IMG/VR virus record: IMGVR_UViG_3300034117_001582
Coordinates: 186,001-250,000 of that record
DNA length: 64,000 nt
Direction: 5' to 3' (one strand)
A program made the position numbers and the translations under genes. Shown here piece by piece: positions 37,752 to 62,142 of the stretch; position 1 is the first letter of the stretch, and each line of letters begins with the position of its first letter. Below the pieces are notes generated by a model. It was not told where the DNA came from, made no database searches, and saw nothing but the letters and a program-made list of their open reading frames with translations.

Positions 37752-38447
37752 TCATTCTTCAAAATATATATCAACCAAATCTTTAATTGTTAACCCAATA
37801 ATATCAACTCCAAGATTTTCCAAAAAAATAGATTCGGATTTATTATACCCATCTTGGTCTACTAAATAACTAGATCCGTCAACTCGAGGTCGATATAAAT
37901 AAAGTTTGTTTACATATTGATTACCAATCTTATAACCTTTAGTAATGTTCATCACATAAAACGGACCACCATCATTTAACATCCTGTTAAAATCTTTTGG
38001 ATAAAAATGTGAGGTAAATATAAGTGGAAGCTCTTCAAAACTTTGAATCATTTTAATTTTTCCATCAAGGTCAATTCCAAACTCATCTTTAAGAAAAATT
38101 TTATTTTTATCATTTGATGTGGATTCATTAATGTTTTTATCCTTATATAAACGAGAACTAAAATAATCTCTAATTACGGAAATATAATTAGTTTGAGTAA
38201 ACTGTTTTATTTGTTTTTTTAATTCTTCTTTTTCATCTCCCTGAAAAGATGTACGATTAACGATTTCATTTGCAATTTTCAATGTAACGACATCTATGAA
38301 TGCATCGTAGTATTCCATATTAAGTGGGGACCGATCATCACCTTGTAAATATTCGTAGGTCAAATCCATCGTAGGCTCAATCATATATTCAATTTCTGAA
38401 ACTCTACGTAATAGACGATGTTGATTTTCTGTTATAATGATTTTCAT
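37752..38447 (-). CDS. MKIIITE-leader two-module protein
   Basis: Module 2 after INES is homologous to the C-terminal modules of 38444 and 46217. Confidence 0.75.
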   Translation of the reverse strand: MKIIITENQHRLLRRVSEIEYMIEPTMDLTYEYLQGDDRSPLNMEYYDAFIDVVTLKIANEIVNRTSFQGDEKEELKKQIKQFTQTNYISVIRDYFSSRLYKDKNINESTSNDKNKIFLKDEFGIDLDGKIKMIQSFEELPLIFTSHFYPKDFNRMLNDGGPFYVMNITKGYKIGNQYVNKLYLYRPRVDGSSYLVDQDGYNKSESIFLENLGVDIIGLTIKDLVDIYFEE

Positions 38448-39385
38448 CTGTCGTCCTCCTCTTCAAAATACATATCAAGTATATCTGAGAACCTTAACCC
38501 CAATATACCAATACCAAGTTTCTCAGGAATTTCATCTTTATTCCAATATCCATCCTCATCAATAAACATTTCAAAATCGCCTCTATCTTGATATAAGTAA
38601 TCTTTACCATTGATATTAACAAGATACATTGGACCCCAAAAGTTTAAATATGTTCTGATAGTTGAAGGAGCGATACCATCATCAAAACTTGTTGGAACAT
38701 CATGTGTAGAAGTTATTTGTTTAATCTTGTCGGTAAAGTCCATACCCATAACAGAAATAAGAAACTTCTTGTTTTTATCATTTGATTCACTAATTTGACT
38801 TACAGCATCATAATCCCCCGAAACAATTTGGTTTTGACTTGGGAAGGAGTCCGTTTTACCGTTTGGAAAAACTGATTTAACTGAAAAATATGCTGTAACA
38901 TTATCTGAATATATAAGAGGGTCACCGGTTAGTTGAGGAAAAAACATATCGTGAATAAAGCTTATTTCATCAAATAACTCAAACTGTGTCGTCATTCGAA
39001 TTTTTTGATAGTTTTTAAAATAAACTGACACTTTTAATAGTGGTTTACTCTCTTCATTTCTCCATCCACCTGCTTCGGCGGTAGAACTTAATTTAACATC
39101 AATCTTAGATACCCAATCAAATGTTTCTGTTAGTTCATTTAAAAGTTTTGAATATGTTTTATATTTTTTTTCTATATCATTTGATGTTGATTCTTTTATA
39201 ATTCTGAATCTTAATAAAGGCTTACCGTTAATTGTAATATCACCTTTATTATTTTTTCCAATAGTTTTAACAACAATCTTTTTGTTTTTAAACTTACCTC
39301 CCATGATTGTATCACCAACCTTGATGTCAAGTTTAATCATTTCAGTTAATTGTCCGTACTGGTCCTCTGTAAGAATGATTTTCAT
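38444..39385 (-). CDS. MKIILTE-leader three-module protein
   Basis: Modules separated by LTE, IKES and ISES; first is KOW/SH3-like (IKVGDTIMGGKFKNK). Confidence 0.75.
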   Translation of the reverse strand: MKIILTEDQYGQLTEMIKLDIKVGDTIMGGKFKNKKIVVKTIGKNNKGDITINGKPLLRFRIIKESTSNDIEKKYKTYSKLLNELTETFDWVSKIDVKLSSTAEAGGWRNEESKPLLKVSVYFKNYQKIRMTTQFELFDEISFIHDMFFPQLTGDPLIYSDNVTAYFSVKSVFPNGKTDSFPSQNQIVSGDYDAVSQISESNDKNKKFLISVMGMDFTDKIKQITSTHDVPTSFDDGIAPSTIRTYLNFWGPMYLVNINGKDYLYQDRGDFEMFIDEDGYWNKDEIPEKLGIGILGLRFSDILDMYFEEEDDR

Positions 39386-39392
39386 ATTATTA

Positions 39393-39893
39393 TTAAACTT
39401 TTTTGGATATATCCGCGCTTGATGTGGTTAATGCCGCAAAATGGCCAGCTTTATGATTGGTTTTATTTGCCCCTTCTTTGGTTCCCTTTCCTCTTGCGTA
39501 AGATTCATAATCTATGTACATATTTTTTTCAGGTATACTAGCATAAATAACACTTTTGTTTGCATCTGACCCATTTCCATTCCAAGGTTCAATACAATAT
39601 ATTTTATTACTTGAAAAATCTAATTTGTTTGCAAGTGTGCCTCCAGCACTAAATAAAATAATAGCCTTGACCTTATTTTCTTTTTCTTTTAAAAAGTCTT
39701 GTATCAGTTTTTTTTCAGAATATCTAAAAGATTTAACAATATGATTTTTATTAAATGATGATGTAAATTTTGCAGTTTGACCATTATGATTAATACTACT
39801 CTCAAGTCCAGACACAAAAACAACATAAGAATCTGTTAATTTTTTTTTGGTTTCTTCTTTTAATATTTTTCTTATATTTTCTTTTAATATCAT
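39393..39893 (-). CDS. Putative small alpha/beta-hydrolase with leader
   Basis: VVFVSGL...IILFSAGG (nucleophile-elbow-like)...GHF; MILKENIRKILKEE. Confidence 0.5.
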   Translation of the reverse strand: MILKENIRKILKEETKKKLTDSYVVFVSGLESSINHNGQTAKFTSSFNKNHIVKSFRYSEKKLIQDFLKEKENKVKAIILFSAGGTLANKLDFSSNKIYCIEPWNGNGSDANKSVIYASIPEKNMYIDYESYARGKGTKEGANKTNHKAGHFAALTTSSADISKKV

Positions 39894-39894
39894 A

Positions 39895-41235
39895 TCAATC
39901 GACGTATCTAGCGAAAAAATTATTAAAAAACATTGCCGCTGAATTCAAAGCAGATTCAAAGTTTTCAACATATGGTGAACCGTCTGTCCATTTTTTTTCA
40001 TCCGATAACGTTGTAGAGTCCAAGACTATTTCTTGACCATTATTACCTTTTCTTTTCCATTTAGGTACATTTTTACTTATGCCTAAATCATCGGATTCAA
40101 ATGAAACGCTATTAGATATATAATACAAATCCACTACTTTATCAAATAATGATTTAACCTCATCATATATAGACCGGTATAATGGATATGGATAATCTTC
40201 CGAATCAAGAATATCCATTACGTTATTTGTTTTACTAACCATACCTCTATAAAATCCATCTGTAAACCCGTCGGAAACGTTACCTTTAAGCGAAATTAGT
40301 TTATTTAAATAATATTTTAAATTTTCAAAAAACAAGTTAAATCGTACTTTTCTTGGGTTTTCAGATACACCAACCAAATTAGGATAATCATTTTTTAAAT
40401 CATCACCTAATATTAAATTAACATTACCACCTCCTGTATAATATTGTAATATTGAATTAACAATGTTATTAGGTTTTATGTCTGATTTTTTTGAAATAGC
40501 ATATACATACGTATCATTATTTATTTCAATTACAAATGAATAAAAATCGGGGTCTTCAACTAATTTAGACCAAATAACTTGCGCCAATGAAGATGCGTTT
40601 GGTTGTGAACTACCCCACCCCAAATATTTAATAAATGATTCATAAATTATATAACCAAGACCTGAACCTCTTAATGAACTAGGAACCCCGCTTGGGAAGT
40701 GTATCCTATTTGTTGGGGAACCTTCAGTATTGATATTAATATTATTCAACAACGTATCAATACTTGATTCCTTAGCGATAGGTCCTGATAGGGTATTATA
40801 TAATTTGTCGGCGCTCATTGGTACATCTTTATCTCCGTGTTCATCACCATAAGGGCCTAACTGACTATCATATACTTGTGATGTAGGTAGTGAAAAATAT
40901 TTTTGAATAAACTCATTAGGGAAATTAACTTTATATATGTTTTTAACGGTTTCTTCAAAGGTTATACCATATTCATTTCCTGAACTTAATCCGGCATCTT
41001 TAAATTGGTTACCTTTAACATCACTAACTTTTTTAATTTTTAAAGATGGAAAAGGTGAGTCCACATTTGATTTATTTGTGTCTTTAAGATTCTTCATTTT
41101 TTCAGGACTCAAGTATGTTTGACTTAAATCAATCCTATCTTCATCAAGTTCATTCTCACAAATTAATGGTTTAACATTACCTAACTTACTTTCCAATAAG
41201 TTATAAAATCTGTTTCTATATTCATTAATATTCAT
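39895..41235 (-). CDS. Leader-bearing protein with a GNAT-like domain
   Basis: RIHFPSGVPSSLRGSGLGYIIY...AQVIWSKL; leader RFYNLLESKLGNVKPLICE. Confidence 0.65.
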   Translation of the reverse strand: MNINEYRNRFYNLLESKLGNVKPLICENELDEDRIDLSQTYLSPEKMKNLKDTNKSNVDSPFPSLKIKKVSDVKGNQFKDAGLSSGNEYGITFEETVKNIYKVNFPNEFIQKYFSLPTSQVYDSQLGPYGDEHGDKDVPMSADKLYNTLSGPIAKESSIDTLLNNININTEGSPTNRIHFPSGVPSSLRGSGLGYIIYESFIKYLGWGSSQPNASSLAQVIWSKLVEDPDFYSFVIEINNDTYVYAISKKSDIKPNNIVNSILQYYTGGGNVNLILGDDLKNDYPNLVGVSENPRKVRFNLFFENLKYYLNKLISLKGNVSDGFTDGFYRGMVSKTNNVMDILDSEDYPYPLYRSIYDEVKSLFDKVVDLYYISNSVSFESDDLGISKNVPKWKRKGNNGQEIVLDSTTLSDEKKWTDGSPYVENFESALNSAAMFFNNFFARYVD

Positions 41236-41320
41236 AATTCCTTTATGATGTTTATTATAAATACCTCATAAAACAAAAAACCCCACTGATGAGGTGGGTA
41301 GTTATGTTTACATTTTAGAT

Positions 41321-41947
41321 TTAGTTTGTTGAATATGAATTTAAATCGGGGTAGTCATTTAACAAATCATTATTTAAATATAAGACCTTATCTCGACCTT
41401 TCTTGGAGATAAAGGATTTTACCAACAAGACAACATCACCAGACCAATCTTTACTAATTGCCATTACATTATGACCTTCACAAACAACACCATAAAAATC
41501 GGGGTCATTCATTATTTTACTCCATACTCTTTTGGATTCATCGGTCGCAGAATCAGATGTAGAAGCATACCCCAAAAATTTTATAAAATCTTGATATATT
41601 ATATAACCCAAACCAATACCTTGTAACTGAGGGTGAACACCTTCTCTGAAATGTATTCGATTAAATTCGCCGCTAGCCTCAATATACGTACTATTTTCAA
41701 AATGGCTCATTACTTGAAAACTATCGGGACCCAAAGTTCTTAAATAACCATAAAACTCTCTAGGTAGACCATTAATTACCATCACTTGATATTGTCCCTC
41801 ACTACCTACCGGTTTAAAAGTAAACGTTGGGTTATTTGATGAGCTAGTTTGTTCAGAAGAAAATATGTTTTCTTTTTTATTTTCATTAATAACTCGTCTA
41901 ACAATTCTTGATAAATCGGATTCGGTAAGTCTTATTATTCTTGACAC
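41321..41947 (-). CDS. LTESDL-leader GNAT-like protein, paralog of 39895
   Basis: NRIHFREGVHPQLQGIGLGYIIY...RVWSKI...DPDFY. Confidence 0.7.
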   Translation of the reverse strand: MSRIIRLTESDLSRIVRRVINENKKENIFSSEQTSSSNNPTFTFKPVGSEGQYQVMVINGLPREFYGYLRTLGPDSFQVMSHFENSTYIEASGEFNRIHFREGVHPQLQGIGLGYIIYQDFIKFLGYASTSDSATDESKRVWSKIMNDPDFYGVVCEGHNVMAISKDWSGDVVLLVKSFISKKGRDKVLYLNNDLLNDYPDLNSYSTN

Positions 41948-41951
41948 AATA

Positions 41952-42218
41952 TTAATTTATTTTTGCATCGATAATAGCATCCATTAATGCGTCTTCAGCT
42001 TTTTTCCAATCGTCATTTGATGGAGTTTCTCCATTCTCAAATGAACCACCATTGTCCTCTACTTGTCTTTTGGCTTCTTCTAGAATATCTGAAAAGCTAT
42101 TCACTATAACCTCAGAAATTACGGCTAAACAAAACTCAGGGGTTTCAATGTCGCTTTCAGATTCTTCTTTAATAACACGTCTAACAATACGTGATAAATC
42201 TCTTTCATTTAATCTCAT
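41952..42218 (-). CDS. Leader cassette, acidic hypothetical protein
   Basis: MRLNERDLSRIVRRVIKEE. Confidence 0.75.
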   Translation of the reverse strand: MRLNERDLSRIVRRVIKEESESDIETPEFCLAVISEVIVNSFSDILEEAKRQVEDNGGSFENGETPSNDDWKKAEDALMDAIIDAKIN

Positions 42219-42293
42219 AATACATTTTTATTATAAATACCACATGAACCAAAAAATAAGGATATTCCCATGTAAAAGATTTTTATATAAAAC

Positions 42294-42707
42294 TTATTTT
42301 TTTTGTTTGGGTACGCTAATACAGGATATCACTTTACCCTCACATTCCATATACTTCACAACCTCAACACCTGGAGGTATATTACCTGAAACGGTTGTTG
42401 TGGTTGTATTTCCTACCGTTACTGTAGATGAATTACCTTGTGCCATTAACCAGTTTCTTTCGGCATCATATTGGGCATACCTAAAAGCATCATACCCATA
42501 ACCTTCACCTTTTATGGTGTTTGGTGGACAAGTAAATGTTTTTTCAACTTCACAACCAAATTTAACTTGTTCAAATTCACCATCTTCCAAACGATTAAAT
42601 AACTTATCAAAAAATTTACGGACCTTTTTTTTAAATCCACGTTCATTTTGTTCATATAATCCCATTATATGTTTTTTCTCTTCTTCGCTGATAATAAACT
42701 TATTCAT
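42294..42707 (-). CDS. Leader cassette, Cys-containing hypothetical protein
   Basis: MNKFIISEEEKKHIMGLYEQ. Confidence 0.75.
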   Translation of the reverse strand: MNKFIISEEEKKHIMGLYEQNERGFKKKVRKFFDKLFNRLEDGEFEQVKFGCEVEKTFTCPPNTIKGEGYGYDAFRYAQYDAERNWLMAQGNSSTVTVGNTTTTTVSGNIPPGVEVVKYMECEGKVISCISVPKQKK

Positions 42708-42791
42708 ATTAATGATTTATAAATAAATACCATATAAAACAAAAAACCCCCTCCGTATAAGGAAAGGGTTCACATATTAATATAAAATTAT

Positions 42792-43022
42792 TTACATACC
42801 ATCTCTAAATCGAGATTCAGCGCCACGTCTTACTTTTCTAGACGATGTCATTTCATCAGCAATGTTTCTTAAAATACTAACGGTTTCTTCGTGACTAGAA
42901 TTTGAGTTTCTTATAACATCCATAATATCGGAGTATAAAGTATTTTTTTCCATGTCCTCACTAACTATACGTTTAACTAATCTTGTTAAATCTCTTTCTG
43001 TAAGTCTAATTATTTTTTTCAT
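42792..43022 (-). CDS. Leader cassette, small hypothetical protein
   Basis: Start reset to MKKIIRLTERDLTRLVKRIVSE. Confidence 0.8.
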   Translation of the reverse strand: MKKIIRLTERDLTRLVKRIVSEDMEKNTLYSDIMDVIRNSNSSHEETVSILRNIADEMTSSRKVRRGAESRFRDGM

Positions 43023-43079
43023 ATTAATAAATATCACATAAAACAAAAAACCCCACCTTAATTAGAGAATGGGGGGTGA

Positions 43080-43172
43080 TTAACTTTTTCCGTGATAATC
43101 AAAATAATCTTTTCTGTCCTTAAGTACCGTTGCAATCACGAACGAAATACTTAATATACTAAATATTGCCAT
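43080..43172 (-). CDS. 30-aa hydrophobic peptide
   Basis: My translation: MAIFSILSISFVIATVLKDRKDYFDYHGKS*; ends at a boundary terminator. Confidence 0.35.
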   Translation of the reverse strand: MAIFSILSISFVIATVLKDRKDYFDYHGKS

Positions 43173-43249
43173 ATACAATATATACTAAAAATTCATTCAA
43201 TAGTCAATTATCGTAGGTTATGAAATAGTTAAGTTTAAACACCTAAAAC

Positions 43250-43687
43250 TTAATGAGTCGTTCTCTTTATCTTTTTATTCTTTTTCACATTAAAGTTATA
43301 TCTTTTATCGTGAGAAGGACCCTTTTCATACCAAAACTCAATACAGTCAATATCAAGACCAGTTTTTTCATTAACATAAGAAAGAACGGTTTTAGAAAAT
43401 AGTTTTTTTCTTGTTGCAACTTTTGGTATAAAATTATCTATTTCTTCTCCGGTCTCAGAATTAACATACATATCTTGTTTACACCCCTCACCTTTACCAC
43501 CAACAGTATAAACTGTAAATATCGCATCACCGTATCCAATCGACTCATTTTCAAACGGATTACTATCATTTGGATATATTCTTATCCTATCGGATTCTCT
43601 TTCATATGAAAGTTTTGGCCCATACAATACGTCCAACAAATTAAATACAATTTTCTGATACTGTGATTTTGTTATGATTACGTCCAT
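43250..43687 (-). CDS. Cassette protein, tandem paralog of 43736
   Basis: IITKSQYQKIVFNLLD...KGEGCK.DM...RKKLFS.T.LSYVNEKT.LDIDCI. Confidence 0.8.
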   Translation of the reverse strand: MDVIITKSQYQKIVFNLLDVLYGPKLSYERESDRIRIYPNDSNPFENESIGYGDAIFTVYTVGGKGEGCKQDMYVNSETGEEIDNFIPKVATRKKLFSKTVLSYVNEKTGLDIDCIEFWYEKGPSHDKRYNFNVKKNKKIKRTTH

Positions 43688-43735
43688 ATAAGATAAATAT
43701 ACAAGAAATAAAAACCACTACGAATATAGGGGGAC

Positions 43736-44146
43736 TTACTTAGTTGTTGTCTTTTTATTTTTTTTAACGTTAAACCTATATCTATTTTCGAAATAAGTTT
43801 CATCATTATTATATATTTCATAAGGAAAATCAATACAGTCAATATCAAGATTTGTTTTTTCATTAACATAAGAAAGAATGGTTCTAGAAAATAGTTTTTT
43901 TCTTAATACCGCTGGTGGTAAATACCTTTCAATTTCCTCAATTGTTTGAGAAAGAACTAACATATCTCTTTTACATCCTTTAGATTTTCCCTGTTTTGTA
44001 TAAACTCTAAAAATTTCTTCACCATGATCTGATAAAATCTCAAATATCTCCTCATCTTTTTTAACTGAAATATTTGGGCCATATAATGTGTCCAACAAAT
44101 TAAAAACAATTTTCTGATATTGTGATACTGTTATAACAATTTTCAT
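43736..44146 (-). CDS. Cassette protein, tandem paralog of 43250
   Basis: MKIVITVSQYQKIVFNLLD; same core motifs. Confidence 0.8.
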   Translation of the reverse strand: MKIVITVSQYQKIVFNLLDTLYGPNISVKKDEEIFEILSDHGEEIFRVYTKQGKSKGCKRDMLVLSQTIEEIERYLPPAVLRKKLFSRTILSYVNEKTNLDIDCIDFPYEIYNNDETYFENRYRFNVKKNKKTTTK

Positions 44147-44225
44147 ATAAGATAAATATAATGGAAAACAAAAAACCCCACCTTAATTAAAAGATGGGGG
44201 TTTCTAAATTTATTATTTATATTTT

Positions 44226-44660
44226 TTAATGACCAGATTGTGAACCTCCATGGTCGTAACGTTCACGTGGGTCCTGTGAATATTGTGGGTCATACTTACT
44301 TGGTTTGCCGTAACTTGTATATTTTGATGTTTGATTGTCATCAACCATTTTCATTGCATCATTAGGATTCATACCGTAATCGGCATAAATTAATCCTTTA
44401 CCTTTTCTTTTTAAATCTCTCAATGATTCTTCATCACCTCTACAATATCTAATGATGATAACCTTGTTTCCGTCTTCATCTTCTTCAATATCAACATGAC
44501 CTTTATTATCTTCTTCATCCATATATTCTTCTGATGAGTCACAATCAACGGCTTTTATATCAAATGTAAAATCCTCATTTGAATTTTCTTCCATTTCCAT
44601 AATAGTTCTTTTAACAATTCTTGTTAAATCTCTTTCAGTTAATCTTATAATTCTTGCCAT
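44226..44660 (-). CDS. LTERDL-leader acidic hypothetical protein
   Basis: MARIIRLTERDLTRIVKRTIME. Confidence 0.8.
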   Translation of the reverse strand: MARIIRLTERDLTRIVKRTIMEMEENSNEDFTFDIKAVDCDSSEEYMDEEDNKGHVDIEEDEDGNKVIIIRYCRGDEESLRDLKRKGKGLIYADYGMNPNDAMKMVDDNQTSKYTSYGKPSKYDPQYSQDPRERYDHGGSQSGH

Positions 44661-44731
44661 AATATTTTAATTTATTAATAAATACTTTGATATTCAAAAA
44701 ACCCCACCTTAATTAAAAGATAGGGATTTTT

Positions 44732-45031
44732 TTAGGATTTTAATTTATCCAAAACTTGAATAAGTTGGTCAGCTCGTTTGTCAGTGTGACTTCTAGAATC
44801 TTGGTGGACTTCCTCAATACGTCTATGGATATGTTCCAAAGTGATATCCAATTCACGTCTTTGGTCATCCAATCTTCTTTGGGAGTATTCCATTTCCCGC
44901 AAATAAGACAATTCCAATTCTTTTAAATCTTTTTTTGTTCTAACAACCATAACTAACCCCCAAACAAGAGCAACAATAAAAATTATTGCAATAATCGAAA
45001 GGATACCTAAAGTAAAATAAAATGTTTCCAT
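44732..45031 (-). CDS. Single-TM coiled-coil protein without leader
   Basis: METFYFTLGILSIIAIIFIVALVWGLVMVV then a heptad pattern; alternative start 45061. Confidence 0.7.
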   Translation of the reverse strand: METFYFTLGILSIIAIIFIVALVWGLVMVVRTKKDLKELELSYLREMEYSQRRLDDQRRELDITLEHIHRRIEEVHQDSRSHTDKRADQLIQVLDKLKS

Positions 45032-45156
45032 TAATTTAAGATTTTGTTGTTTATACCTCAAGGGTATATAAAGTATAATGAAAACATATTAAAAATAAAT
45101 AAAAAACCCCTCTTTGTTGGGAGGGGAATCATTTTAAATTTATCAAAATAATTGTT

Positions 45157-45594
45157 TTAGTGATTTTCTCCTGATAAGTACTTAGGATTTGGATATACTA
45201 TCTTCTTATTATATAATTTATTCTTATCTTCATCGGATAACTTTGGGGTCTTGTCTTTGGATTTGGATGCAAGTAGTGAAACAAGTGGTTCTAATGGTGT
45301 TAAAGGCACAGGAGATTTAATGAGCAAACAATTTAATACTTTTGTTACTTCTTTTAGATTATTGTAGGTCAACATATTTCCAATAGCATTTAGACATTCT
45401 TTACTTATTAAATCTCCAGTACCCATAGTACCAGACAAAGTCTTTTTAGGTTTTGTGTCACAAGATTTTGGTATACTTAGAGTTGTTTTACTAAAACAGC
45501 CACCGACCATTGATGTGGTGTCTTCCTCTTCTTTAAGAACTCTTCTTACAATACGTGATAAATCTCTTTCTGTTAATCTAACTATTCTTGCCAT
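45157..45594 (-). CDS. LTERDL-leader Cys-containing hypothetical protein
   Basis: MARIVRLTERDLSRIVRRVLKEE. Confidence 0.8.
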   Translation of the reverse strand: MARIVRLTERDLSRIVRRVLKEEEDTTSMVGGCFSKTTLSIPKSCDTKPKKTLSGTMGTGDLISKECLNAIGNMLTYNNLKEVTKVLNCLLIKSPVPLTPLEPLVSLLASKSKDKTPKLSDEDKNKLYNKKIVYPNPKYLSGENH

Positions 45595-45674
45595 AATATT
45601 TTAATTTATTATAAATACTTCGTAAAACAAAAAACCCCTCTGTTGGGAGGGGGAGTATTTTAATTTTTTTAAAA

Positions 45675-46121
45675 TTATAGATATGCTTTTATATGATTTC
45701 TTTTTAACCAACTTCTAACTTGTTCCTCTGTTTGACCTTTTTGTATTTTTGATAATACATGTTTACGGTCACCATTACCTAGTATTTCACCGGTTTTTGG
45801 AACATATTTTATCATGAGATACCCGTCCATTGGTTTTTTTAATTGAATCTCTATGCCGGTTTTAGCAGTTACGGTAACCTCTTGATATGTTTGTAACTTT
45901 GCATACCTATCGGTACCATCGTCTTTACAAGGAATTTCTTTATAATTATTATCAATACAACTGTCAGGATCTCCATACCTATCGGTATCATTGCCCTTAC
46001 AAGCTATTCTATTACCTTTAAAATCAATACAGAATCCTTCTTCATCCGCAGTATTTTCATTAATTATTCGTTTAACAATTCTTGCTAAATCAGATTCAGT
46101 TAATCTTATAATTCTTGCCAT
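45675..46121 (-). CDS. LTESDL-leader hypothetical protein with short Cys repeats
   Basis: MARIIRLTESDLARIVKRIINE; CID...I.CK..GTDRY repeated twice. Confidence 0.8.
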   Translation of the reverse strand: MARIIRLTESDLARIVKRIINENTADEEGFCIDFKGNRIACKGNDTDRYGDPDSCIDNNYKEIPCKDDGTDRYAKLQTYQEVTVTAKTGIEIQLKKPMDGYLMIKYVPKTGEILGNGDRKHVLSKIQKGQTEEQVRSWLKRNHIKAYL

Positions 46122-46216
46122 AATTTATATTTTATTATAAATACATCATAAAACAAAAAAGGAAGGGGGCGGGGGGATGGTTCAATGTAAAAAATTTTTC
46201 CAGAAAATTAGCCGTG

Positions 46217-46621
46217 TTATAAATACAATTTTATTATATCAATAGGGTCCAACCCTATTTCACTAATATTAAATAGTTTGTTTAAACGGTCTCCCGTTAA
46301 TGAGGAAGTTGCTCCAAGTTCATTATCTATTTCTATATCATAAAATATTTCCAAAGCAAATCCACCATTGCGTTCGCTATCCACAAATAAAAAAGTTCTA
46401 TCCTTAAATTTAATAAGATACAAAGGACCAAATGGTTTTACCTGAGACCTAAACCACCAACGGGTTACCAAATCACGAACATTAGTTGGCATATCATCAT
46501 ACGTCTCAATAAGTTTAACTTCCAATTCAAAATCAAACTCATATTTCAAAAACTTTTTAAACTTATCGGTTTTTGATTCAAACAATAAGTTATACTGGTC
46601 TTCAGTTATAATGATTTTCAT
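46217..46621 (-). CDS. MKIIITE-leader single-module protein (module shared with 37752 and 38444)
   Basis: LFES...KFKKFL...FGPLYLI...IGLDPIDIIKLY; start reset to 46621. Confidence 0.75.
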   Translation of the reverse strand: MKIIITEDQYNLLFESKTDKFKKFLKYEFDFELEVKLIETYDDMPTNVRDLVTRWWFRSQVKPFGPLYLIKFKDRTFLFVDSERNGGFALEIFYDIEIDNELGATSSLTGDRLNKLFNISEIGLDPIDIIKLYL

Positions 46622-46693
46622 ATAAGATAAATATAAGGAAACAAAAAACCCCACTGATGAGGTGGGGAATTATTTTACATATTATAAGGATTA

Positions 46694-47299
46694 CTAATCA
46701 AGTTCTGAACCCCATGATTTAATTATATTATTAATTGGTTTTTTGTGCCATTTTCTATAAATGTCAATACTATCTTTAACATCTTCCATCATATCACCAT
46801 TAAATCTTTGTTTATATAGGGTTACAACTTCATTATATTTTTTCCAACATTCAGGACAGTTTCCTTCTTTTTTTAAAGGTTTTGACATATTTAAAAATGC
46901 TGCTTCAATAGGGGCTTCCGCATTCCCATCAGTTATAAACTCAGGAGCGGAGTAATCTTTAGGTACCATCTTTTTTCCAAATTCTTGTTGAATCAAGACC
47001 GCTAATGAGTGACTTTTCTGTAATGATGCGTAAATTAAATCGGCAAGTTCTTTTGTTGTCATTGAATTTTCAATATAGTTATAATCAAGTTCTCCACCTT
47101 CAATAACGTCCCTATACAAATTTTTAATTTTTTGAATAAAGGATGGTTCATTTTGTTCAGAAATTAAAGGTTTAACATCTCCCAATGTTGATTCCATTAA
47201 TTGTTTAAACCTTGAAGTATCAACCGACATACCCCCATTATGTTGTTCACGAATACTATTCTTTTCTTCGTCTGATAAATTATTTAATAAATGTTTCAT
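46694..47299 (-). CDS. Double-leader hypothetical protein
   Basis: LSDEEKNSIREQH...RFKQLMESTLGDVKPLISEQ (compare 39895). Confidence 0.8.
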   Translation of the reverse strand: MKHLLNNLSDEEKNSIREQHNGGMSVDTSRFKQLMESTLGDVKPLISEQNEPSFIQKIKNLYRDVIEGGELDYNYIENSMTTKELADLIYASLQKSHSLAVLIQQEFGKKMVPKDYSAPEFITDGNAEAPIEAAFLNMSKPLKKEGNCPECWKKYNEVVTLYKQRFNGDMMEDVKDSIDIYRKWHKKPINNIIKSWGSELD

Positions 47300-47385
47300 A
47301 ATATATTTGTTTTATTTATAAATACCACATAAAACAAAAACCCCCACTCGTTGGAATAGGGGTTTAATAATTTGACCGATATGAA

Positions 47386-47745
47386 TTAATATTTAGGTTC
47401 TCTACCACACGTTAGTTTATAGTAGTAAATTATAAAATCAAGTTTCTCATTAATTAGATATTCCCTTATTGATAAATCCAATGAATTACCATCAGATTCA
47501 AATTCAGATTTAATCTGTTCATTATGTAAATATAACCTTAAAAACAATCTTTCCATTACATGATTAAAGTATGTTTTTAGTTTTAAATATTTACAAATTT
47601 TCATATCAGACAATATCCCTATTAACAATTCAGTTATATCAATCCCCCTTCTTCTGAAATATGTGTCACTTATTGTTGATTCAGATATTACCTGTTTAAC
47701 GATTCTTGTAATATCTGATTCCGTAAGTCTTATAGTTTTTTTCAT
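47386..47745 (-). CDS. LTESDI-leader hypothetical protein
   Basis: Start reset to MKKTIRLTESDITRIVKQVISES. Confidence 0.8.
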   Translation of the reverse strand: MKKTIRLTESDITRIVKQVISESTISDTYFRRRGIDITELLIGILSDMKICKYLKLKTYFNHVMERLFLRLYLHNEQIKSEFESDGNSLDLSIREYLINEKLDFIIYYYKLTCGREPKY

Positions 47746-47801
47746 ATAATGATAAATATATGGGGAAATAAAAAACCCCACTAGTTGGAATGGGGGGTAT
47801 C

Positions 47802-48176
47802 TTATCTTTTATTCCATTTGGATTTTAATTTGGACTTGTATTTTTTTGGGATGTACTCAAATAAAAACTCTTTCACCCTCTTTCTATATTTTTCATCTAC
47901 CTGTTTAAAATAAAACCCCGAACCTCTAAGTAACTTAAATGTGATTAATCCCCCCATTTGTTCTAAAAAATGGTCTTCATTTTTAAAACCATTAGTATCT
48001 ATGTCATCAATAGTTTTATTAACAACATTTAATATGTGGTCATTTAATGAAGTATCTTTTTTATTATAGAATCTTTCTAAATCCGATATCTTTTTTATTT
48101 CATCACTTTCTTCAGTTATAACTCGTCTAACCATTTCTATAAGTTCTGATTCTGTAAGTCTAATTACTTTTTTCAT
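47802..48176 (-). CDS. LTESEL-leader hypothetical protein
   Basis: MKKVIRLTESELIEMVRRVITEE. Confidence 0.8.
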   Translation of the reverse strand: MKKVIRLTESELIEMVRRVITEESDEIKKISDLERFYNKKDTSLNDHILNVVNKTIDDIDTNGFKNEDHFLEQMGGLITFKLLRGSGFYFKQVDEKYRKRVKEFLFEYIPKKYKSKLKSKWNKR

Positions 48177-48653
48177 AGTATTATTGTTTAAATATAAATA
48201 CCCCTATTTTCCTAAAATTTTTCTGGAATTTTTTTTTAACATATAGGGGGTATTCCGACTTTTAAAGAATTTTTACCAAAATATTTTTTAAGACCATATA
48301 CCCTTTTTTATAACCCATACTCTGCAAGAGGGATTGACCCCCCTTTTGACCCCTGACATTGTGTCAGAAAGAGGGAGGATACGGGGGAGGGGGCCCCCAT
48401 TAAATGAGGGGAGGGGGGTATGCCAAAGATATGAGGGGGGTAGACATAGGGGATGTTAGTTATCAACATAATGTTCATAAAGATATATGAAATAAATGTG
48501 GGGGATTGTTTGGCAGTATCAATAACATTCACTATCTTTGTATAGACAATGTGAGAGAGATGTCGGGCTGAGGGAACAACACCCTTTGGAGTGTAGACTC
48601 CAACCTGCCTTTATAATATATAATGGGACTTATAAATAATTATGTTAGACCCC

Positions 48654-50103: not shown

Positions 50104-51225
50104 TTATGCGTAGTTAACGTCTCTTGTTGTATCTATTTTTGCAAACTCCTGAGAGTAATCGTATATCTTATTTAAATCCACCTCTATATATGAATCATAC
50201 TCATCTTTTACTGTTTTTGTTGCGGTATTAAAAAGTGTTTTAACGTCATGTGCGTCAGTATCATTAATAAACAATTTAAAATTTAATAACGTAATATCTT
50301 CTGTACTTTTGAATGGTATCTTCATTAAATTATTCTCGTAAACCACATTAAAAACATTATCACCACTTTTAATCTTAACATTATCTTTTATTAATTTAAT
50401 AAAATTATCTAATGTTCCAAAATCATCTACCCCTAAAAGTCTTTTTAAATTTTGAACTCTTGATGAATTTTCAGTAGCAGAGTTACCGTAATCGGTATTA
50501 GTATTAACGGAAATTTGGGGGCCTTTAGCGTCTTCTGGTAAATAATCCACACCCTTACTGATAAAATACCCGCTAAGGCAGTGATTAAACTCGTGTACTA
50601 AAATTAACATAATAGAGTTTTTATTAACGTCACTTGGAAATACATTTTTAACACAAAAATTCAACTTAGAATATTCACCTTTAATAACAAACCCACCTGT
50701 AGAATCGTCACATGTCAAACTAAAAACTAAATTTACACTATTTAAAAAGTTTTTTAATTCATTTTTTTGTTTGTTATCCCATGCCGTTATCACGCCTTTT
50801 AATTTTACCTCCTCTTCTTTTACCATATCATTAAAAAACTCAAGGGTTTCTTTTGCTCTTTGTAATTCAGAAATATTGGCATTTTTTAACCCATTAACTT
50901 TGTTTTGCCAATTAATTACTTGTTTTTTATATTTTTCTAAATCTTCTGTATTGTATTTAGAACCTTTTCCTATTTTTTCTTGAACTTTTTTATTGAACCA
51001 CTCGCTATCTATGTATTTTAACATGTAAGTTTTTGCTTCTGTAAAAAATGGTTTAACAAAATTTTCAACCTCTGTTATTTTTTCTTGTTCGGTTTTGGCT
51101 TTGTCTTCCCAATAGGCTCGAAGGGTATTTAAATTAATGTTTTTTAATTTACAAGCATCATCCACTTCCTCTTTAATTACACCCATTATTGATTGTATTC
51201 TTCTTATGTTTTCGTGTAAATTCAT
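50104..51225 (-). CDS. MNLHENIRRIQ-leader HExxH metallopeptidase-like protein
   Basis: ILVHEFNHC...ENSSRV..LKRLL; paralog of 53720. Confidence 0.7.
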   Translation of the reverse strand: MNLHENIRRIQSIMGVIKEEVDDACKLKNINLNTLRAYWEDKAKTEQEKITEVENFVKPFFTEAKTYMLKYIDSEWFNKKVQEKIGKGSKYNTEDLEKYKKQVINWQNKVNGLKNANISELQRAKETLEFFNDMVKEEEVKLKGVITAWDNKQKNELKNFLNSVNLVFSLTCDDSTGGFVIKGEYSKLNFCVKNVFPSDVNKNSIMLILVHEFNHCLSGYFISKGVDYLPEDAKGPQISVNTNTDYGNSATENSSRVQNLKRLLGVDDFGTLDNFIKLIKDNVKIKSGDNVFNVVYENNLMKIPFKSTEDITLLNFKLFINDTDAHDVKTLFNTATKTVKDEYDSYIEVDLNKIYDYSQEFAKIDTTRDVNYA

Positions 51226-51285
51226 ATTAATAAATATATCATAAATAAAAATCCCCCCATCTTTACAAGTGGAGGATTAGTCATT

Positions 51286-51987
51286 TTATGGTACTTGTTG
51301 TAACCCTAACTCAAAGTAGTCATACTCGTTGTTGTAAAATCTTGGATTGTTTACAAATATATTATACATTGGAAGTAAAATGTTATGTAACTCTTCTTTC
51401 CATTCGTCGTAGTCAGTTTCTGTCATATCACTTATAAAATATTTAGGTTTTACTTTTTCTAATGTTCGTTCTAAATTGTCTTGAAGATTAGTTTTTCTTA
51501 GGTTTGTTATATTTCCATAAACATATACTTCTACTTCAGGGTCATTTGTTGTGACATGCGTGGTTTCATAATCAAAGTCAAACTCATAACGATAAAACAC
51601 CCCCGAAAAATCAATATGTTTAATTTGTTTTCCACTAACATTAAGATGTGTTCTATCTTCTTTTGATACATAACAATTGTTTCTGATATTTTTCATCCAT
51701 GAAGCAAAATGCTTATATTTGTTAAAATCAGTGTTTGTCATATCACAAAATGATTTAAACTCATCATGTAAAACTTGAGTTAGTATTGTTTTTGAATATG
51801 AATAATCATTTGGGTTTTTAACTTTCCATTTTATTTGTAACCCTGTCCATTTTGGAACTAAAAAAAGTCCTTCGAATTCTATTGGGTTTTCATTTAAATA
51901 ATTATAATAGTAATACTTTACAGGATTTTCTTTAGGGTTGGTTCTTTCTTCCCTTAATACTCTTCTTATGTTCTCTTGTAGGTTCAT
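51286..51987 (-). CDS. MNLQENI-leader hypothetical protein
   Basis: MNLQENIRRVLREE; ATGA overlap with the upstream gene. Confidence 0.8.
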   Translation of the reverse strand: MNLQENIRRVLREERTNPKENPVKYYYYNYLNENPIEFEGLFLVPKWTGLQIKWKVKNPNDYSYSKTILTQVLHDEFKSFCDMTNTDFNKYKHFASWMKNIRNNCYVSKEDRTHLNVSGKQIKHIDFSGVFYRYEFDFDYETTHVTTNDPEVEVYVYGNITNLRKTNLQDNLERTLEKVKPKYFISDMTETDYDEWKEELHNILLPMYNIFVNNPRFYNNEYDYFELGLQQVP

Positions 51988-52715
51988 TCTGATAAATCTA
52001 TAAACCAAGCAGATATTGGCACGTTTAGTTGGTTGGCGATGGTTGATCGTTTGTGTCCACCAATTAATGTATATTCATTTCCTTCTCTTCCGCCTGTTGG
52101 TAATTTCATTACAAATGGTGCTGGAAGTTCTCTATGTTTTTCATTTCTTATTTTTTCTATATTATCAACATAACCTTTGTGACGTTGTTTAACTTCTCCA
52201 TCATCGCCTGTCATTTGTTTAATTAAACCTGATGATGTGGTATCTTTAAACATTCCTGGAAACTCTTTTGAGAATCTACCCATATAAAATGTGTTATTTA
52301 TCATATCATTATCCCATTCTTCCATTCTTCCTTTATTAAACAAATTAAACCCTTCCATTTGTGATTGTCCATCTTTTAATAAAACTTGTCTAAAATCCTC
52401 CCAATCATCCATTAAATCAGATATTTCTTTATCTAATAGAATGTCTTTAATTTCTTGTTCATCATCCACTTCACTTCCTTTTGAATGTTCGGCAATCATT
52501 TTGAATGTATGAGGAAATATGGAATACATTAAATCATAATTTTGTGGGTGAAAGAATTCATCTTTACTGAACCTCATATTATTTCCCAATAGTTCATCTA
52601 ACTCTTGGTTAAAGTATTCTACTGTTGGTTCTAACCAAGTGATAGAATATGGATTTGATATCTCATTTAACCCCATCATTGATTTAATTCTTTGTATGTT
52701 TTCTTGTAGGTTCAT
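51984..52715 (-). CDS. MNLQENI-leader protein with a C-terminal ParB/Srx-like motif
   Basis: LPAPFVMK...YTLIGGHKRSTIA. Confidence 0.55.
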   Translation of the reverse strand: MNLQENIQRIKSMMGLNEISNPYSITWLEPTVEYFNQELDELLGNNMRFSKDEFFHPQNYDLMYSIFPHTFKMIAEHSKGSEVDDEQEIKDILLDKEISDLMDDWEDFRQVLLKDGQSQMEGFNLFNKGRMEEWDNDMINNTFYMGRFSKEFPGMFKDTTSSGLIKQMTGDDGEVKQRHKGYVDNIEKIRNEKHRELPAPFVMKLPTGGREGNEYTLIGGHKRSTIANQLNVPISAWFIDLSE

Positions 52716-52728
52716 ATTAATGAATATA

Positions 52729-52938
52729 TTATTTTTTGATAATTCTTATTCTTTTTTTTTCAATCCAATTTTTTAATTCTTGAGTTTCTGGTACTTCAGT
52801 TAAAACAAACTCCCTAATATAATCATCGGCTAAAAAATTTGGTAAATTAACGGGTTGAAATCCCATTTCGTTTTTTGTGATTAAGACCAAATGATTTTTT
52901 TTTCTTTTGTGTCTTTTGGTGGGTATTAGTTTTTTCAT
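52729..52938 (-). CDS. Small basic hypothetical protein
   Basis: 69-aa ORF filling the gap between cassettes. Confidence 0.55.
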   Translation of the reverse strand: MKKLIPTKRHKRKKNHLVLITKNEMGFQPVNLPNFLADDYIREFVLTEVPETQELKNWIEKKRIRIIKK

Positions 52939-52978
52939 TTATGTTTTATTATTCTTTTTATATAACCTTGTAGGTTCA

Positions 52979-53296: not shown

Positions 53297-53297
53297 A

Positions 53298-53705: not shown

Positions 53706-53719
53706 ATTATATGAATATA

Positions 53720-54787: not shown

Positions 54788-54802
54788 AATGATAAATACT
54801 TT

Positions 54803-56552: not shown

Positions 56553-56630
56553 ATTCGTTTAATATAATAATAATCCACCATATTTACAAGTGGAGAATAA
56601 AATTTATATTCAGCAATATCCAAATTTAAT

Positions 56631-57140: not shown

Positions 57141-57189
57141 ATTATATAATTATCTTTGTGTTCATTAATGTTATATTTCATATCACTTA

Positions 57190-60308: not shown

Positions 60309-60309
60309 G

Positions 60310-61076: not shown

Positions 61077-61078
61077 TA

Positions 61079-62140: not shown

Positions 62141-62142
62141 TA

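What the first reader, a model, noticed from the sequence alone, without database searches (positions are those of the whole stretch)
41257..48200. Cassette array: each short gene is bounded by a repeated terminator + TATTTAT + ATG + leader unit
Seen: about 12 intergenic elements with the minus-strand layout [CCCC..GGGG hairpin]-TTTTTTGTTTT-~10 nt-TATTTAT-5 to 15 nt-ATG. Sub-families are near-identical in DNA: AAACAAAAAACCCCACTGATGAGGTGGG at ~41271 and ~46640; AAAAAACCCCACCTTAATTA at ~43045, ~44170 and ~44696; AAAAAACCCCTCT..GTTGGGAGGGGA at ~45100 and ~45629; CCCCACT.GTTGGAAT.GGGG at ~47341 and ~47775. The genes between them are unrelated except for the leader. Inference: each gene is a self-contained expression unit, and boundary plus leader homology lets cassettes be gained, lost or shuffled by recombination, without an integrase and unlike an integron.
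Basis: partly seen in the sequence, partly recalled or inferred. Interest (0 to 1): 0.8.

Follow-up and report, generated by a model that had tools for sequence, protein, structure and literature searches.

The report
Shuffling gene cassettes in giant phage
In an uncultured 292-kb T4-related phage of Bacteroidota, a run of about 15 small unknown genes each has its own terminator-plus-promoter unit, relatives gain, lose and swap genes at those units, and most of the proteins share a short N-terminal tag that may send them into the phage head.

Summary
In window 41257-48200 (minus strand), 13 of 15 genes have TATTTAT 11-28 nt before the ATG. Nine of these also have a strict G+C hairpin plus T-run. 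Nine of the genome's 16 such composite units lie in this 6.5 kb.

TATTTAT is not specific to the array. It is the top upstream 7-mer genome-wide (104 of 350 ORFs against 10.7 expected). It also precedes the scaffold/capsid, protease and sheath genes, so it is probably the late promoter.

The contig is a 99%-complete jumbo phage with a T4-type capsid protein and prohead protease.

Relatives show the predicted plasticity:
- a one-cassette indel flanked by a 47-bp perfect repeat of hairpin plus promoter;
- a gene replacement that starts right after TATTTAT;
- a reordered paralogue pair;
- near-total content turnover between conserved anchor genes.

No integrase is present. UvsX-like and SbcC-like genes are.

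The closest known systems are the T4-type PeSL cassettes and the T-even internal-protein loci.

The leader is conserved as protein, not as DNA. Four leader families tag 58 of 350 ORFs, and nearly all end in (I/L/V/M)-x-Glu, the T4 protease site. A capsid-targeting propeptide is my leading inference, but it is untested. I rate this a new variant of a known kind.

The parts
41257..48200 (-). Cassette array: 15 small genes. Thirteen have TATTTAT 11-28 nt before the ATG, and most of those follow a hairpin plus T-run.
47802..48176 (-). 124-aa gene, leader A. TATTTAT at 48194-48200. No upstream hairpin.
47386..47745 (-). 119-aa gene, leader A. Hairpin 47776-47795, TATTTAT 47752-47758.
46694..47299 (-). 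201-aa gene, leader D followed by motif C. Hairpin 47338-47365, TATTTAT 47318-47324.
46217..46621 (-). 134-aa gene, leader B. Hairpin 46649-46667 (same sequence family as 41282-41298), TATTTAT 46627-46633.
45675..46121 (-). 148-aa gene, leader A. Preceded by a C-rich tract and T-run without a stem (about 46160-46180). TATTTAT 46137-46143.
45157..45594 (-). 145-aa gene, leader A. Hairpin 45635-45652, TATTTAT 45611-45617.
44732..45031 (-). 99-aa predicted membrane protein. Hairpin 45107-45126 upstream, but no TATTTAT and no leader.
44226..44660 (-). 144-aa gene, leader A. Hairpin 44702-44725, TATTTAT 44678-44684.
43736..44146 (-). 136-aa gene, leader B, paralogue of the next gene. Hairpin 44176-44199, TATTTAT 44152-44158.
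43250..43687 (-). 145-aa gene, leader B. Weak hairpin near 43710-43730, TATTTAT 43693-43699.
42792..43022 (-). 76-aa gene, leader A. Hairpin about 43051-43076, TATTTAT 43027-43033. A different gene takes its place in strain variant L006, with the breakpoint right after TATTTAT.
42294..42707 (-). 137-aa gene, leader D. Hairpin 42744-42771, TATTTAT 42719-42725.
41952..42218 (-). 88-aa gene, shortened leader A. T-run with weak stem, TATTTAT 42233-42239.
41321..41947 (-). 208-aa gene, leader A, GTG start 4 nt after the previous stop, no unit of its own. Its C-terminal region resembles that of the 446-aa protein.
39895..41235 (-). 446-aa gene, motif C near the N-terminus. Hairpin 41282-41298, TATTTAT 41257-41263. 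This is the last unit of the array.
50104..63855 (-). Neighbouring block of mostly leader E/F genes (about 17 genes) with few hairpins. Part of the same leader-tagged gene system.
37752..39893 (-). Downstream leader-tagged genes: 166 aa (E/F), 313 aa (B) and 231 aa (B), packed without units of their own.

Best explanation
The window lies in a 292-kb, 99%-complete genome of an uncultured jumbo myophage. The phage belongs to the T4 superfamily and its host is almost certainly a Bacteroidota bacterium.

The array is a hyperplastic region. Each small gene of unknown function is preceded by a portable regulatory unit. The unit consists of an intrinsic-terminator hairpin with a T-run, then the phage's own promoter motif TATTTAT at a fixed 16-18 nt, then a short SD-less leader and the ATG.

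TATTTAT also precedes the scaffold/capsid, protease and sheath genes. The cassettes are therefore probably late genes, each insulated from its neighbours (inferred).

The units come in a few near-identical sequence families. They therefore give 20-47 bp of homology between otherwise unrelated genes. The phage's own homologous recombination machinery (UvsX-like and SbcC-like genes, no integrase) uses this homology to delete, insert, replace and reorder cassettes. Comparison with relatives shows these outcomes. The enzymes responsible are inferred.

The N-terminal leader is a separate layer. It is a 15-30 residue peptide conserved as protein. It occurs in four families on 58 of 350 ORFs and nearly always ends in (I/L/V/M)-x-Glu. 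My preferred reading, at about 40%, is a capsid-targeting propeptide. In this reading it docks the protein on the acidic scaffold core and is cut off by the T4 gp21-type prohead protease. The cassettes would then encode a variable cargo of head-packaged, injected proteins, as at the T-even internal-protein loci.
For: Phage identity:
- Gp23 capsid protein (PF07068) and Peptidase_S77 prohead protease (PF03420), plus portal, sheath and other phage genes.
- 99% complete.

Host:
- A second promoter class, TAnnTTTG, matches the Bacteroidota -7 element.
- A CHU_C/T9SS domain protein is present.
- The nearest cultured capsid proteins include one from a Flavobacterium phage.

Units:
- Terminator-like sites are enriched.
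- 9 of the genome's 16 composite units lie in the array, at fixed geometry.
- TATTTAT is about 10-fold enriched upstream of ORFs. It precedes the scaffold-capsid operon, the sheath gene and the protease gene. It is absent before the RNR, helicase and SbcC genes.

Plasticity:
- L105 and L106 are 99% identical but differ by one 208-aa cassette. It is flanked by a 47-bp perfect repeat of hairpin, T-run and TATTTAT. L106 has one hybrid copy, and L107 from a third sample has the long form.
- L006 is 99.8% identical over 7 kb, then carries a different gene starting right after TATTTAT.
- In L104, the orthologues of 44146 and 43687 (85% and 74% identity) are swapped and moved ahead of 46621 and 46121.
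- In L033, anchor genes are 58-86% identical but the cassette content is almost wholly different.
- The same hairpin families stand before different genes in other phage contigs.

Recombination genes: no integrase or resolvase. A UvsX-like and an SbcC-like gene are present.

Leader:
- In the 12-sequence alignment A1 of leader A proteins, R6, L7, E9, V16 and E22 are invariant and total divergence follows.
- Synonymous codon changes occur at conserved residues.
- 55 of 58 leaders have [ILVM]xE at the leader end, against about 27% of control proteins.
- The capsid protein has ...LINE|AAS at the position corresponding to the T4 gp23 cleavage site.
- The T4 gp24 propeptide, MAKINELLRE|S, resembles leaders E/F.
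- T4 capsid-targeting sequences are 10-20 residue propeptides cut after Glu, and the internal proteins that carry them are diverse (PMC3012670, PMC9026906, PMC5694885).
- One leader-B protein is a lysozyme with a LysM domain.
Against: - No transcript ends, no virion proteome and no cleavage data exist, so promoter function, late timing, insulation and head packaging are all inferred.
- No T4 gp55 homologue was found by sequence.
- [ILVM]xE is common in this K/E/I-rich proteome, and the test windows were chosen after seeing the data.
- 58 targeted proteins would be far more than in T4.
- A leader-A-like peptide also heads small proteins in Prevotella and other Bacteroidales genomes. There it sits next to IS1595-like transposases, with no phage head genes among the neighbours inspected. 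This argues for a function not tied to a capsid.
- The clean indel comes from a related phage, not from the window's own strain, and rests on metagenome assemblies.
- Eight near-identical strain contigs show a fixed gene order.
Confidence: 0.6

Rival explanations
1. The leader is not a capsid-targeting propeptide. It is a general N-terminal interaction module, for example a helix that binds a host factor, drives oligomerisation, or marks the protein for a protease. Phage proteins and other mobile-element proteins of Bacteroidota would share it. The cassette shuffling would stand, but the cargo would act inside the infected cell without being packaged.
For: A closely similar N-terminal peptide occurs in 16 GTDB genomes, mostly Prevotella. 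It heads proteins with unrelated C-termini. These genes lie convergent with IS1595-like transposases, and none of the neighbouring ORFs I inspected looked like a phage head gene. The phage encodes a large AAA+ ATP-dependent protease. AF2 predicts only an isolated helix at residues 9-24.
Against: Four different leader families all end in [ILVM]xE. The phage has a gp21-type protease. The cassettes use the same promoter as the head and tail genes. The T-even internal-protein loci are a close precedent.
Confidence: 0.3
2. The array is simply a tandemly duplicated and diverged gene family. Boundaries and leaders look alike because they were copied together. The units have no special role in recombination.
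For: There are real paralogues: 44146 and 43687 at 53% amino-acid identity, and the 208-aa and 446-aa proteins share a C-terminal region. Hairpins fall into sub-families. Order is fixed in eight near-identical contigs.
Against: Most C-terminal parts show no similarity. The indel has a hybrid unit exactly as expected from unit-to-unit recombination. A replacement starts at the unit. The same hairpin modules precede genes with different leaders in other phages.
Confidence: 0.12
3. One reading: DNA homology in the leader coding sequence, together with the boundary, is what recombination uses. The leader would be kept for that reason.
For: The longest exact match between two units, 30 nt, spans the ATG and the first leader codons of the 148-aa and 144-aa genes.
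Against: Conserved leader residues use different codons (Leu7 CTT or TTA; Arg AGA, CGT or CGA; Thr8 ACA, ACG or ACT). Selection therefore acts on the peptide. The breakpoints mapped lie in the hairpin-promoter part or just before the ATG.
Confidence: 0.1
4. TATTTAT is not a promoter. It would be part of the 5' untranslated region or a translation signal, and the array would be read as one or a few long transcripts attenuated at the hairpins.
For: The motif sits at tightly constrained distances from the ATG (11-13 or 18-25 nt). Bacteroidota do not use Shine-Dalgarno sequences (own knowledge).
Against: The motif lies at a fixed 16-18 nt after strong terminators. It occurs mainly where intergenic gaps exist: median 56 nt, against 4 nt for genes without it. 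It resembles the -10-type T4 late promoter in length and composition.
Confidence: 0.1

Closest known systems
PeSLs (promoter-early stem-loops), the mobile regulatory cassettes of T4-type phages (Arbiol et al. 2010, PMC2839356; Comeau et al. 2014, PMC4122927)
   Same: - Composite intergenic unit of a G/C-rich stem-loop terminator plus a promoter.
- Concentrated in hyperplastic regions in front of ORFans.
- Indels and replacements between close relatives are bounded by the units.
- Recombination works without a site-specific recombinase.
- The host phage belongs to the T4 superfamily.
   Different: - The promoter here is not the host sigma-70-like early type. It is TATTTAT, shared with the structural genes.
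- The host-type TAnnTTTG promoters form a separate class.
- The stem-loop always precedes the promoter at a fixed distance.
- The cassettes also share protein leaders.
- Mini-circles were not tested.
Internal-protein (IP) loci of T-even phages and the capsid-targeting sequence (Repoila et al. 1994, EMBO J 13:4181, not held and cited from memory and via PMC9026906; Mullaney and Black 1996 via PMC9026906; PMC3012670)
   Same: - Small, mutually unrelated proteins share only a short conserved N-terminal leader.
- The leader ends at a Glu cleavage site of the gp21-type protease.
- The loci are polymorphic in the number, order and identity of genes among relatives.
- Conserved flanking regulatory blocks were proposed to mediate shuffling.
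   Different: - Leaders here are 15-30 residues, against 10 in T4, and show no evident sequence similarity to the T4 leader.
- There are four leader families on 58 proteins, against a handful in T4.
- Packaging and cleavage are not shown.
- A similar leader also occurs in Prevotella chromosomes.
Propeptide-bearing ejection proteins of giant phages (SPN3US, phiKZ; PMC5694885)
   Same: Many head proteins carry N-terminal propeptides cut after Glu. Paralogues have conserved N-termini and diverged bodies.
   Different: Those phages use an A/S/G-x-Glu motif and propeptides that are mostly over 100 residues. They belong to a different lineage and lack the terminator-promoter cassette structure.
Integron gene cassettes
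   Same: An array of short, unrelated genes separated by repeated imperfect inverted repeats.
   Different: No integrase is present. The hairpins are T-run terminators, not attC sites. Each cassette has its own promoter.

Membership tests
PeSL-type regulatory cassettes | Composite intergenic unit: stable stem-loop terminator plus promoter | tested here: met
   22 terminator-like sites against 6.1 in shuffles. There are 16 composite units genome-wide, 9 of them in the array, with a fixed spacing of 16-18 nt.
PeSL-type regulatory cassettes | The promoter matches the host sigma-70 consensus (early promoter) | tested here: not met
   Sigma-70-like sites number 81 against 83.5 in shuffles. The unit's motif is TATTTAT, which is also upstream of the head and tail genes. 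The host-like TAnnTTTG class is separate.
PeSL-type regulatory cassettes | Preferentially in hyperplastic regions, upstream of ORFans | tested here: met
   Array proteins have no significant Pfam, PHROG or NCBIfam match. Content turns over between relatives whose anchor genes are conserved.
PeSL-type regulatory cassettes | Insertions, deletions and replacements between close relatives are bounded by the units | tested here: met
   L105/L106 indel with a 47-bp repeat and a hybrid copy. L006 replacement beginning after TATTTAT.
PeSL-type regulatory cassettes | Excised cassette mini-circles | not testable with these tools
   This needs PCR, or raw reads of an infected culture.
T-even internal-protein / CTS loci | Short conserved N-terminal leader on otherwise unrelated small proteins | tested here: met
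   In the 12-sequence alignment A1, the 22-residue leader is conserved, E22 is invariant, and no similarity follows it. Four families cover 58 of 350 ORFs.
T-even internal-protein / CTS loci | The leader ends in the prohead-protease site (hydrophobic residue, any residue, Glu) | tested here: met
   55 of 58 leaders against about 27% of controls. This is sequence evidence only.
T-even internal-protein / CTS loci | The phage encodes a gp21-family (S77) prohead protease and a gp23-family capsid protein with a propeptide | tested here: met
   PF03420 at 4.8e-25 and PF07068 at 2.9e-73. The capsid protein has LINE|AAS at the equivalent of the T4 gp23 cleavage site.
T-even internal-protein / CTS loci | Proteins are packaged in the head, processed, and injected | not testable with these tools
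   This needs virion mass spectrometry on an isolate.
T-even internal-protein / CTS loci | Leader homologous to the T4 CTS | tested here: inconclusive
   There is no evident similarity in sequence or length to the 10-residue T4 IPIII leader described in PMC9026906. Leaders E/F resemble the T4 gp24 propeptide only in style.
Integron | Tyrosine-recombinase integrase next to the array | tested here: not met
   PF00589 and PF00239 are absent from the 99%-complete genome, and the controls were positive.
Integron | Promoterless cassettes ending in attC | tested here: not met
   Each cassette carries TATTTAT. The hairpins are followed by T-runs, as in intrinsic terminators.

The most novel reading that the evidence does not exclude
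The four leader families would form a multi-channel address code that loads dozens of diverse small effectors and enzymes into the head of these jumbo phages for injection. That would be 17% of the proteome and would include a lysozyme. The terminator-promoter units would let the cargo be re-dealt among phages. Alternatively, leader A is a trafficking or interaction tag found across Bacteroidota and shared by phages and IS1595-associated genes of Prevotella. That would be a new kind of mobile-element protein tag.
Probability: 0.3. Interest if true: 0.8.

Novelty: new variant of a known kind. Interest (0 to 1): 0.6.

Why it matters
The finding would extend the PeSL and internal-protein logic from coliphages to a large, uncultured clade of freshwater Bacteroidota jumbo phages. 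That logic is portable regulatory units that shuffle accessory genes, plus a common N-terminal address on variable cargo. Leader A alone matches at least 590 stretches in IMG/VR, and none of the leaders tested (A, B, E) occurs in 50,697 cultured phage genomes.

If the leaders are capsid-targeting signals, they mark a very large and fast-changing set of injected proteins. Such proteins are the natural place to look for new anti-defence functions. The leaders would also offer a ready-made tag for packaging foreign proteins.

The leaders and the TATTTAT unit are also practical markers for recognising this phage group and its late genes in metagenomes.

Tried and rejected
Searches that found nothing useful:
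- Megablast of the array against cultured phages gave no match.
- tblastn of leaders A, B and E against cultured phages gave nothing, or chance hits at E about 3.
- Pfam, PHROG and NCBIfam on the array proteins gave nothing significant.
- Rfam on the whole window, and more permissively on 48150-50150, gave nothing.
- No tRNAs were found in the window.
- A T4 gp55 query on the phage's own genome gave no match, so the factor that reads TATTTAT is unknown.
- The ESM Atlas gave only unnamed viral clusters at low scores.
- A PDB sequence search with the 208-aa protein gave nothing.
- A literature search for the leader motif gave no paper.

Results too weak to use:
- AF2 of the 148-aa protein reached mean pLDDT 59, so I ran no fold search.
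- Metatranscriptome contigs on 41301-47300 were short and at low depth. They piled up mainly on leader-A codons from many phages. They give no transcript-end information, and DNA carry-over is not excluded.

Items unavailable:
- The Repoila 1994 paper is not held.
- The 19.6-kb relative has no DNA, so its apparently rearranged order rests on gene sizes only.
I replaced it with a degenerate DNA pattern.

Ideas considered and rejected:
- Integron: no integrase, and each cassette has its own promoter.
- RiPP precursor array: the 'cores' are 50-430 aa and no modification enzymes are nearby.
- Sec, Tat or T9SS signal: the leader is charged and helical, not hydrophobic, and not C-terminal.
- Ribbon-helix-helix domain: nothing is conserved after the first helix.

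Full report
**What the sequence is**

The window is bases 186001-250000 of a single 291,867-bp contig at 31.8% G+C. The contig is an IMG/VR virus record rated 99% complete. It encodes:
- a Gp23-family major capsid protein (PF07068, 2.9e-73);
- a Peptidase_S77 prohead protease of the T4 gp21 family (PF03420, 4.8e-25);
- a portal protein, a tail sheath, a ribonucleotide reductase, a helicase and an SbcC-like nuclease.

The order terminase, portal, protease, acidic scaffold, capsid protein is that of T4. The nearest capsid proteins in the phage collection are 40-44% identical: an uncultured metagenomic phage record, Microcystis phage Mel-JY01 and Flavobacterium phage immuto. The contig is therefore an uncultured jumbo myophage on a distant branch of the T4 superfamily.

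The host is very probably a Bacteroidota bacterium:
- One structural-region protein carries SprB, PKD and the CHU_C type IX secretion sorting domain.
- Several proteins have flavobacterial-style signal peptides.
- No Shine-Dalgarno sequences are visible.
- At least 15 genes that lack TATTTAT have TATCTTTG or TATATTTG upstream. This matches TAnnTTTG, the Bacteroidota -7 promoter element as I know it from the literature.

**Checking the observation**

Thirteen of the 15 genes have TATTTAT 11-28 nt before the ATG.

A consensus scan finds 22 terminator-like hairpins in 38000-52000, against 6.1 +/- 2.6 in shuffles. Sigma-70-like promoters are not enriched, at 81 against 83.5.

With my own strict definition there are 51 terminator-like sites in the whole genome. 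Sixteen are followed by TATTTAT and an ATG, and nine of those lie in window 41298-47795. The gap from the end of the hairpin to TATTTAT is 16-18 nt in nearly every unit, here and elsewhere in the genome.

The four claimed sub-families of near-identical boundaries are real, with exact matches of 20-28 nt.
- TATTTAT by itself is the most enriched upstream 7-mer of the whole genome, in 104 of 350 ORFs against 10.7 expected.
- The genes are not all unrelated, and more than one leader is present.

**What TATTTAT is**

Genes that have TATTTAT sit behind real intergenic gaps, with a median of 56 nt. Genes without it have a median gap of 4 nt, as expected of a promoter at operon heads.

The motif precedes the scaffold-capsid operon, the tail sheath gene, the prohead protease gene and many very large, probably structural, genes. 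It is absent before the ribonucleotide reductase, helicase and SbcC genes.

With the host-type TAnnTTTG class as the likely early promoters, TATTTAT is best read as the phage's late, or middle-to-late, promoter. It would be the counterpart of the T4 late promoter TATAAATA (own knowledge). This is an inference. I found no gp55 homologue by sequence, and there are no transcript data.

**Do cassettes move?**

1. Fixed order in the strain. Eight contigs that are 99.8-100% identical to the window carry the same order. The array is therefore stable over short times.

2. A replacement. One of those contigs, L006, matches from window 50063 down to 43014 at 99.8% and then diverges. After the shared hairpin, T-run and TATTTAT of the 76-aa gene, a different gene follows, of at least 162 aa with a D-type leader. 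The breakpoint lies between TATTTAT and the first codons.

3. A clean indel. In a more distant relative the orthologue of the 148-aa protein is 66% identical. Two contigs from different samples, L105 and L106, are 99% identical apart from one 208-aa leader-A cassette. In L105 the cassette is flanked by a 47-bp perfect direct repeat made of the hairpin, the T-run and TATTTAT. L106 has a single copy with the left flank of one repeat and the right flank of the other. A third sample, L107, has the long form. This is the footprint of homologous recombination between two units.

4. A reordering. In L104 the proteins are 74-85% identical to those of the window. The orthologues of 43687 and 44146 are in the opposite order. 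They also lie ahead of the orthologues of 46621 and 46121 instead of after them.

5. Content turnover. In L032/L033 the anchor genes are 58-86% identical (glycosyltransferase, metallophosphatase and the 105-aa gene). The dozen cassettes between the anchors are almost all different.

6. Shared modules. The same hairpin sequences, loops included, occur in other phage contigs in front of genes with different leaders.

The genome has no tyrosine or serine recombinase. It does have a UvsX-like recombinase, an exonuclease and an SbcC-like nuclease.

**The leader**

In the 12-sequence alignment A1 of leader A proteins from this genome, a 22-residue N-terminus is conserved. R6, L7, E9, V16 and E22 are invariant, and nothing is alignable after E22. 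The conserved residues use different codons in different copies, for example Leu7 as CTT or TTA and Arg as AGA, CGT or CGA. The peptide, not the DNA, is under selection.

Clustering the first 32 residues of all 350 ORFs gives four leader families:

| Family | Genes | N-terminus |
|---|---|---|
| A | 15, plus one with a GTG start | IRLTESDL.RIV.RVI.E |
| B | 16 | begins MKIIITESQY |
| E/F | 19 | begins MNLQENIRRI or M..LIK.ILKEE |
| D | 8 | ..IISEEEK..I..LH |

Together these cover 58 ORFs, or 17% of the genome's ORFs. The proteins range from 68 to 641 aa. One leader-B protein is a phage lysozyme with a LysM domain. One leader-D protein has carboxypeptidase-regulatory-like and Ig-like domains.

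In 55 of 58, the conserved block ends in [ILVM]-x-Glu, against about 27% of other proteins in the same windows. Most leaders also have a second such site further in.

This is the specificity known for T4 gp21, which cuts after Glu. T4's capsid-targeting sequences are 10-20 residue propeptides on otherwise unrelated internal proteins (PMC3012670, PMC9026906, PMC5694885). Fetched T4 sequences show gp24 MAKINELLRE|S and gp23 ...FLTE|AEIGG. This phage's capsid protein has ...SHLINE|AASTDSSG just ahead of the segment that aligns with the start of mature gp23.

AF2 predicts the leader as a lone helix (residues 9-24) followed by a low-confidence linker, but the model is poor at pLDDT 59.

I therefore rank 'capsid-targeting propeptide removed by the S77 protease' as the most likely function, at roughly 40%.

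**Distribution, and a complication**

The pattern [IV]RLTE[SR][DE]L hits at least 590 stretches in IMG/VR. In the 80 loci kept there are 163 N-terminal copies, all in DNA of about 30% G+C. Most lie behind ATATTTAT, often several per locus and mixed with the other leader families. None of the three leaders tested occurs in 50,697 cultured phage records. No paper contains the motif.

A stringent degenerate DNA pattern also found 16 genomes among 185,579 species representatives. Nearly all are Prevotella or other Bacteroidales. In each, MNKKLIRLTESDLHRIVKESV.RVL.E heads a small protein with a variable C-terminus. In the loci I inspected, the gene usually lies convergent with an IS1595-like transposase, and none of the neighbouring ORFs looked like a phage head gene. 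That is hard to square with a purely capsid-bound role and keeps a more general interaction-tag reading alive.

**RNA evidence**

Lake metatranscriptome runs hold fragments of the array. The contigs are 100-350 nt long and at low depth. They pile up mainly on leader-A codons shared by many phages, and their far ends do not match the window. They show neither transcript ends nor read-through, and DNA carry-over cannot be excluded.

**Comparison with what is known**

The boundary units work like PeSLs: stem-loop plus promoter units that flank ORFans in hyperplastic regions of T4-type phages and mediate indels and replacements (PMC2839356, PMC4122927). They fail one defining feature, because the promoter is not the host early type.

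The leader-plus-unit arrangement matches the T-even internal-protein loci. There, according to my recollection of Repoila et al. 1994 (not held) and to PMC9026906 and PMC3012670, diverse proteins share only a capsid-targeting leader and the loci vary in gene number, order and identity.

The system is not an integron.

The new elements are:
- the phage clade and its host phylum;
- the late-type promoter within the unit;
- the scale, with four leader families on 17% of the ORFs;
- the occurrence of leader A in Prevotella chromosomes.

**Verdict**

The feature is real. It is a new variant of a known kind. Interest is 0.6, driven by the untested possibility of a very large, shuffled set of head-packaged proteins.

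Noticed in passing
genome-wide; in the window for example near 49925-49935 (minus strand) and 48540-48560 (plus strand): There is a second upstream motif class, TATCTTTG or TATATTTG (TAnnTTTG, the Bacteroidota -7 promoter element). It precedes at least 15 genes that lack TATTTAT. This suggests host-type early promoters and a Bacteroidota host.
   Followed up: partly
L109-L124, for example L118:6932-7195 (Segatella bryantii DSM 11371), L112:1342-1776, L117:1278-1733, L123:6498-7115: A leader-A-like N-terminus (MNKKLIRLTESDLHRIVKESV.RVL.E) heads small proteins with unrelated C-termini in 16 GTDB genomes, mostly Prevotella. In the loci inspected the gene is usually convergent with, and abuts, an IS1595-like transposase gene.
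   Followed up: partly
window 48180-48830 and 49150-50100: Two stretches of about 0.65 and 0.95 kb have no convincing ORF, in a genome that is 94% coding. They flank a conserved 105-aa gene and contain C-rich and G-rich tracts and TAnnTTTG-like sites. Relatives L104 and L108 have a similar arrangement. There is no Rfam match.
   Followed up: partly
window 50104-63855 (genome 236104-249855): A block of about 17 consecutive genes carries E/F-type leaders (MNLQENIRRI..., M..LIK.ILKEE). Most are packed head to tail without hairpins, unlike the array next to it. In L006, different E-leader genes take the place of the 373-aa gene.
   Followed up: partly
genome 257849-258772 (L020:7849-8772): A leader-B protein carries a phage lysozyme domain and a C-terminal LysM domain. 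It could be a virion-associated lysin, or an endolysin with an unusual N-terminus.
   Followed up: no
window 16755-19214 and 4592-6517: A phage protein has SprB, PKD-like and CHU_C (type IX secretion sorting) domains. A leader-D protein has carboxypeptidase-regulatory-like and Ig-like domains. Both lie among very large, probably structural genes.
   Followed up: no
window 23236-24510: A full-length UvrC-like protein (GIY-YIG, UVR and UvrC RNase H domains) is encoded on the plus strand of the phage.
   Followed up: no
window 42901-43100 and 44501-44700: In lake metatranscriptome contigs, depth peaks 5- to 40-fold over the leader-A codons of two genes, and the far ends of those contigs do not match the window. 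Many different leader-A genes from related phages are therefore present in these libraries.
   Followed up: partly
genome 165090-167135 (L018:5090-7135): The phage encodes a 681-aa AAA+ ATP-dependent protease (phrog_4871, E 3.5e-223). This could matter if the leaders are degradation or processing tags.
   Followed up: no
window 41321-41947 and 39895-41235: The 208-aa and 446-aa proteins share a region containing G(I/S)GLGYIIY..FIK(F/Y)LG. By eye this recalls the acetyl-CoA-binding motif of GNAT acetyltransferases. No profile or PDB match supports that.
   Followed up: partly
window 1-4000: G+C rises to 0.43-0.46 against about 0.30 elsewhere. The stretch lies inside the 2919-aa ORF that runs off the window's start (genome 181308-190067).
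   Followed up: no
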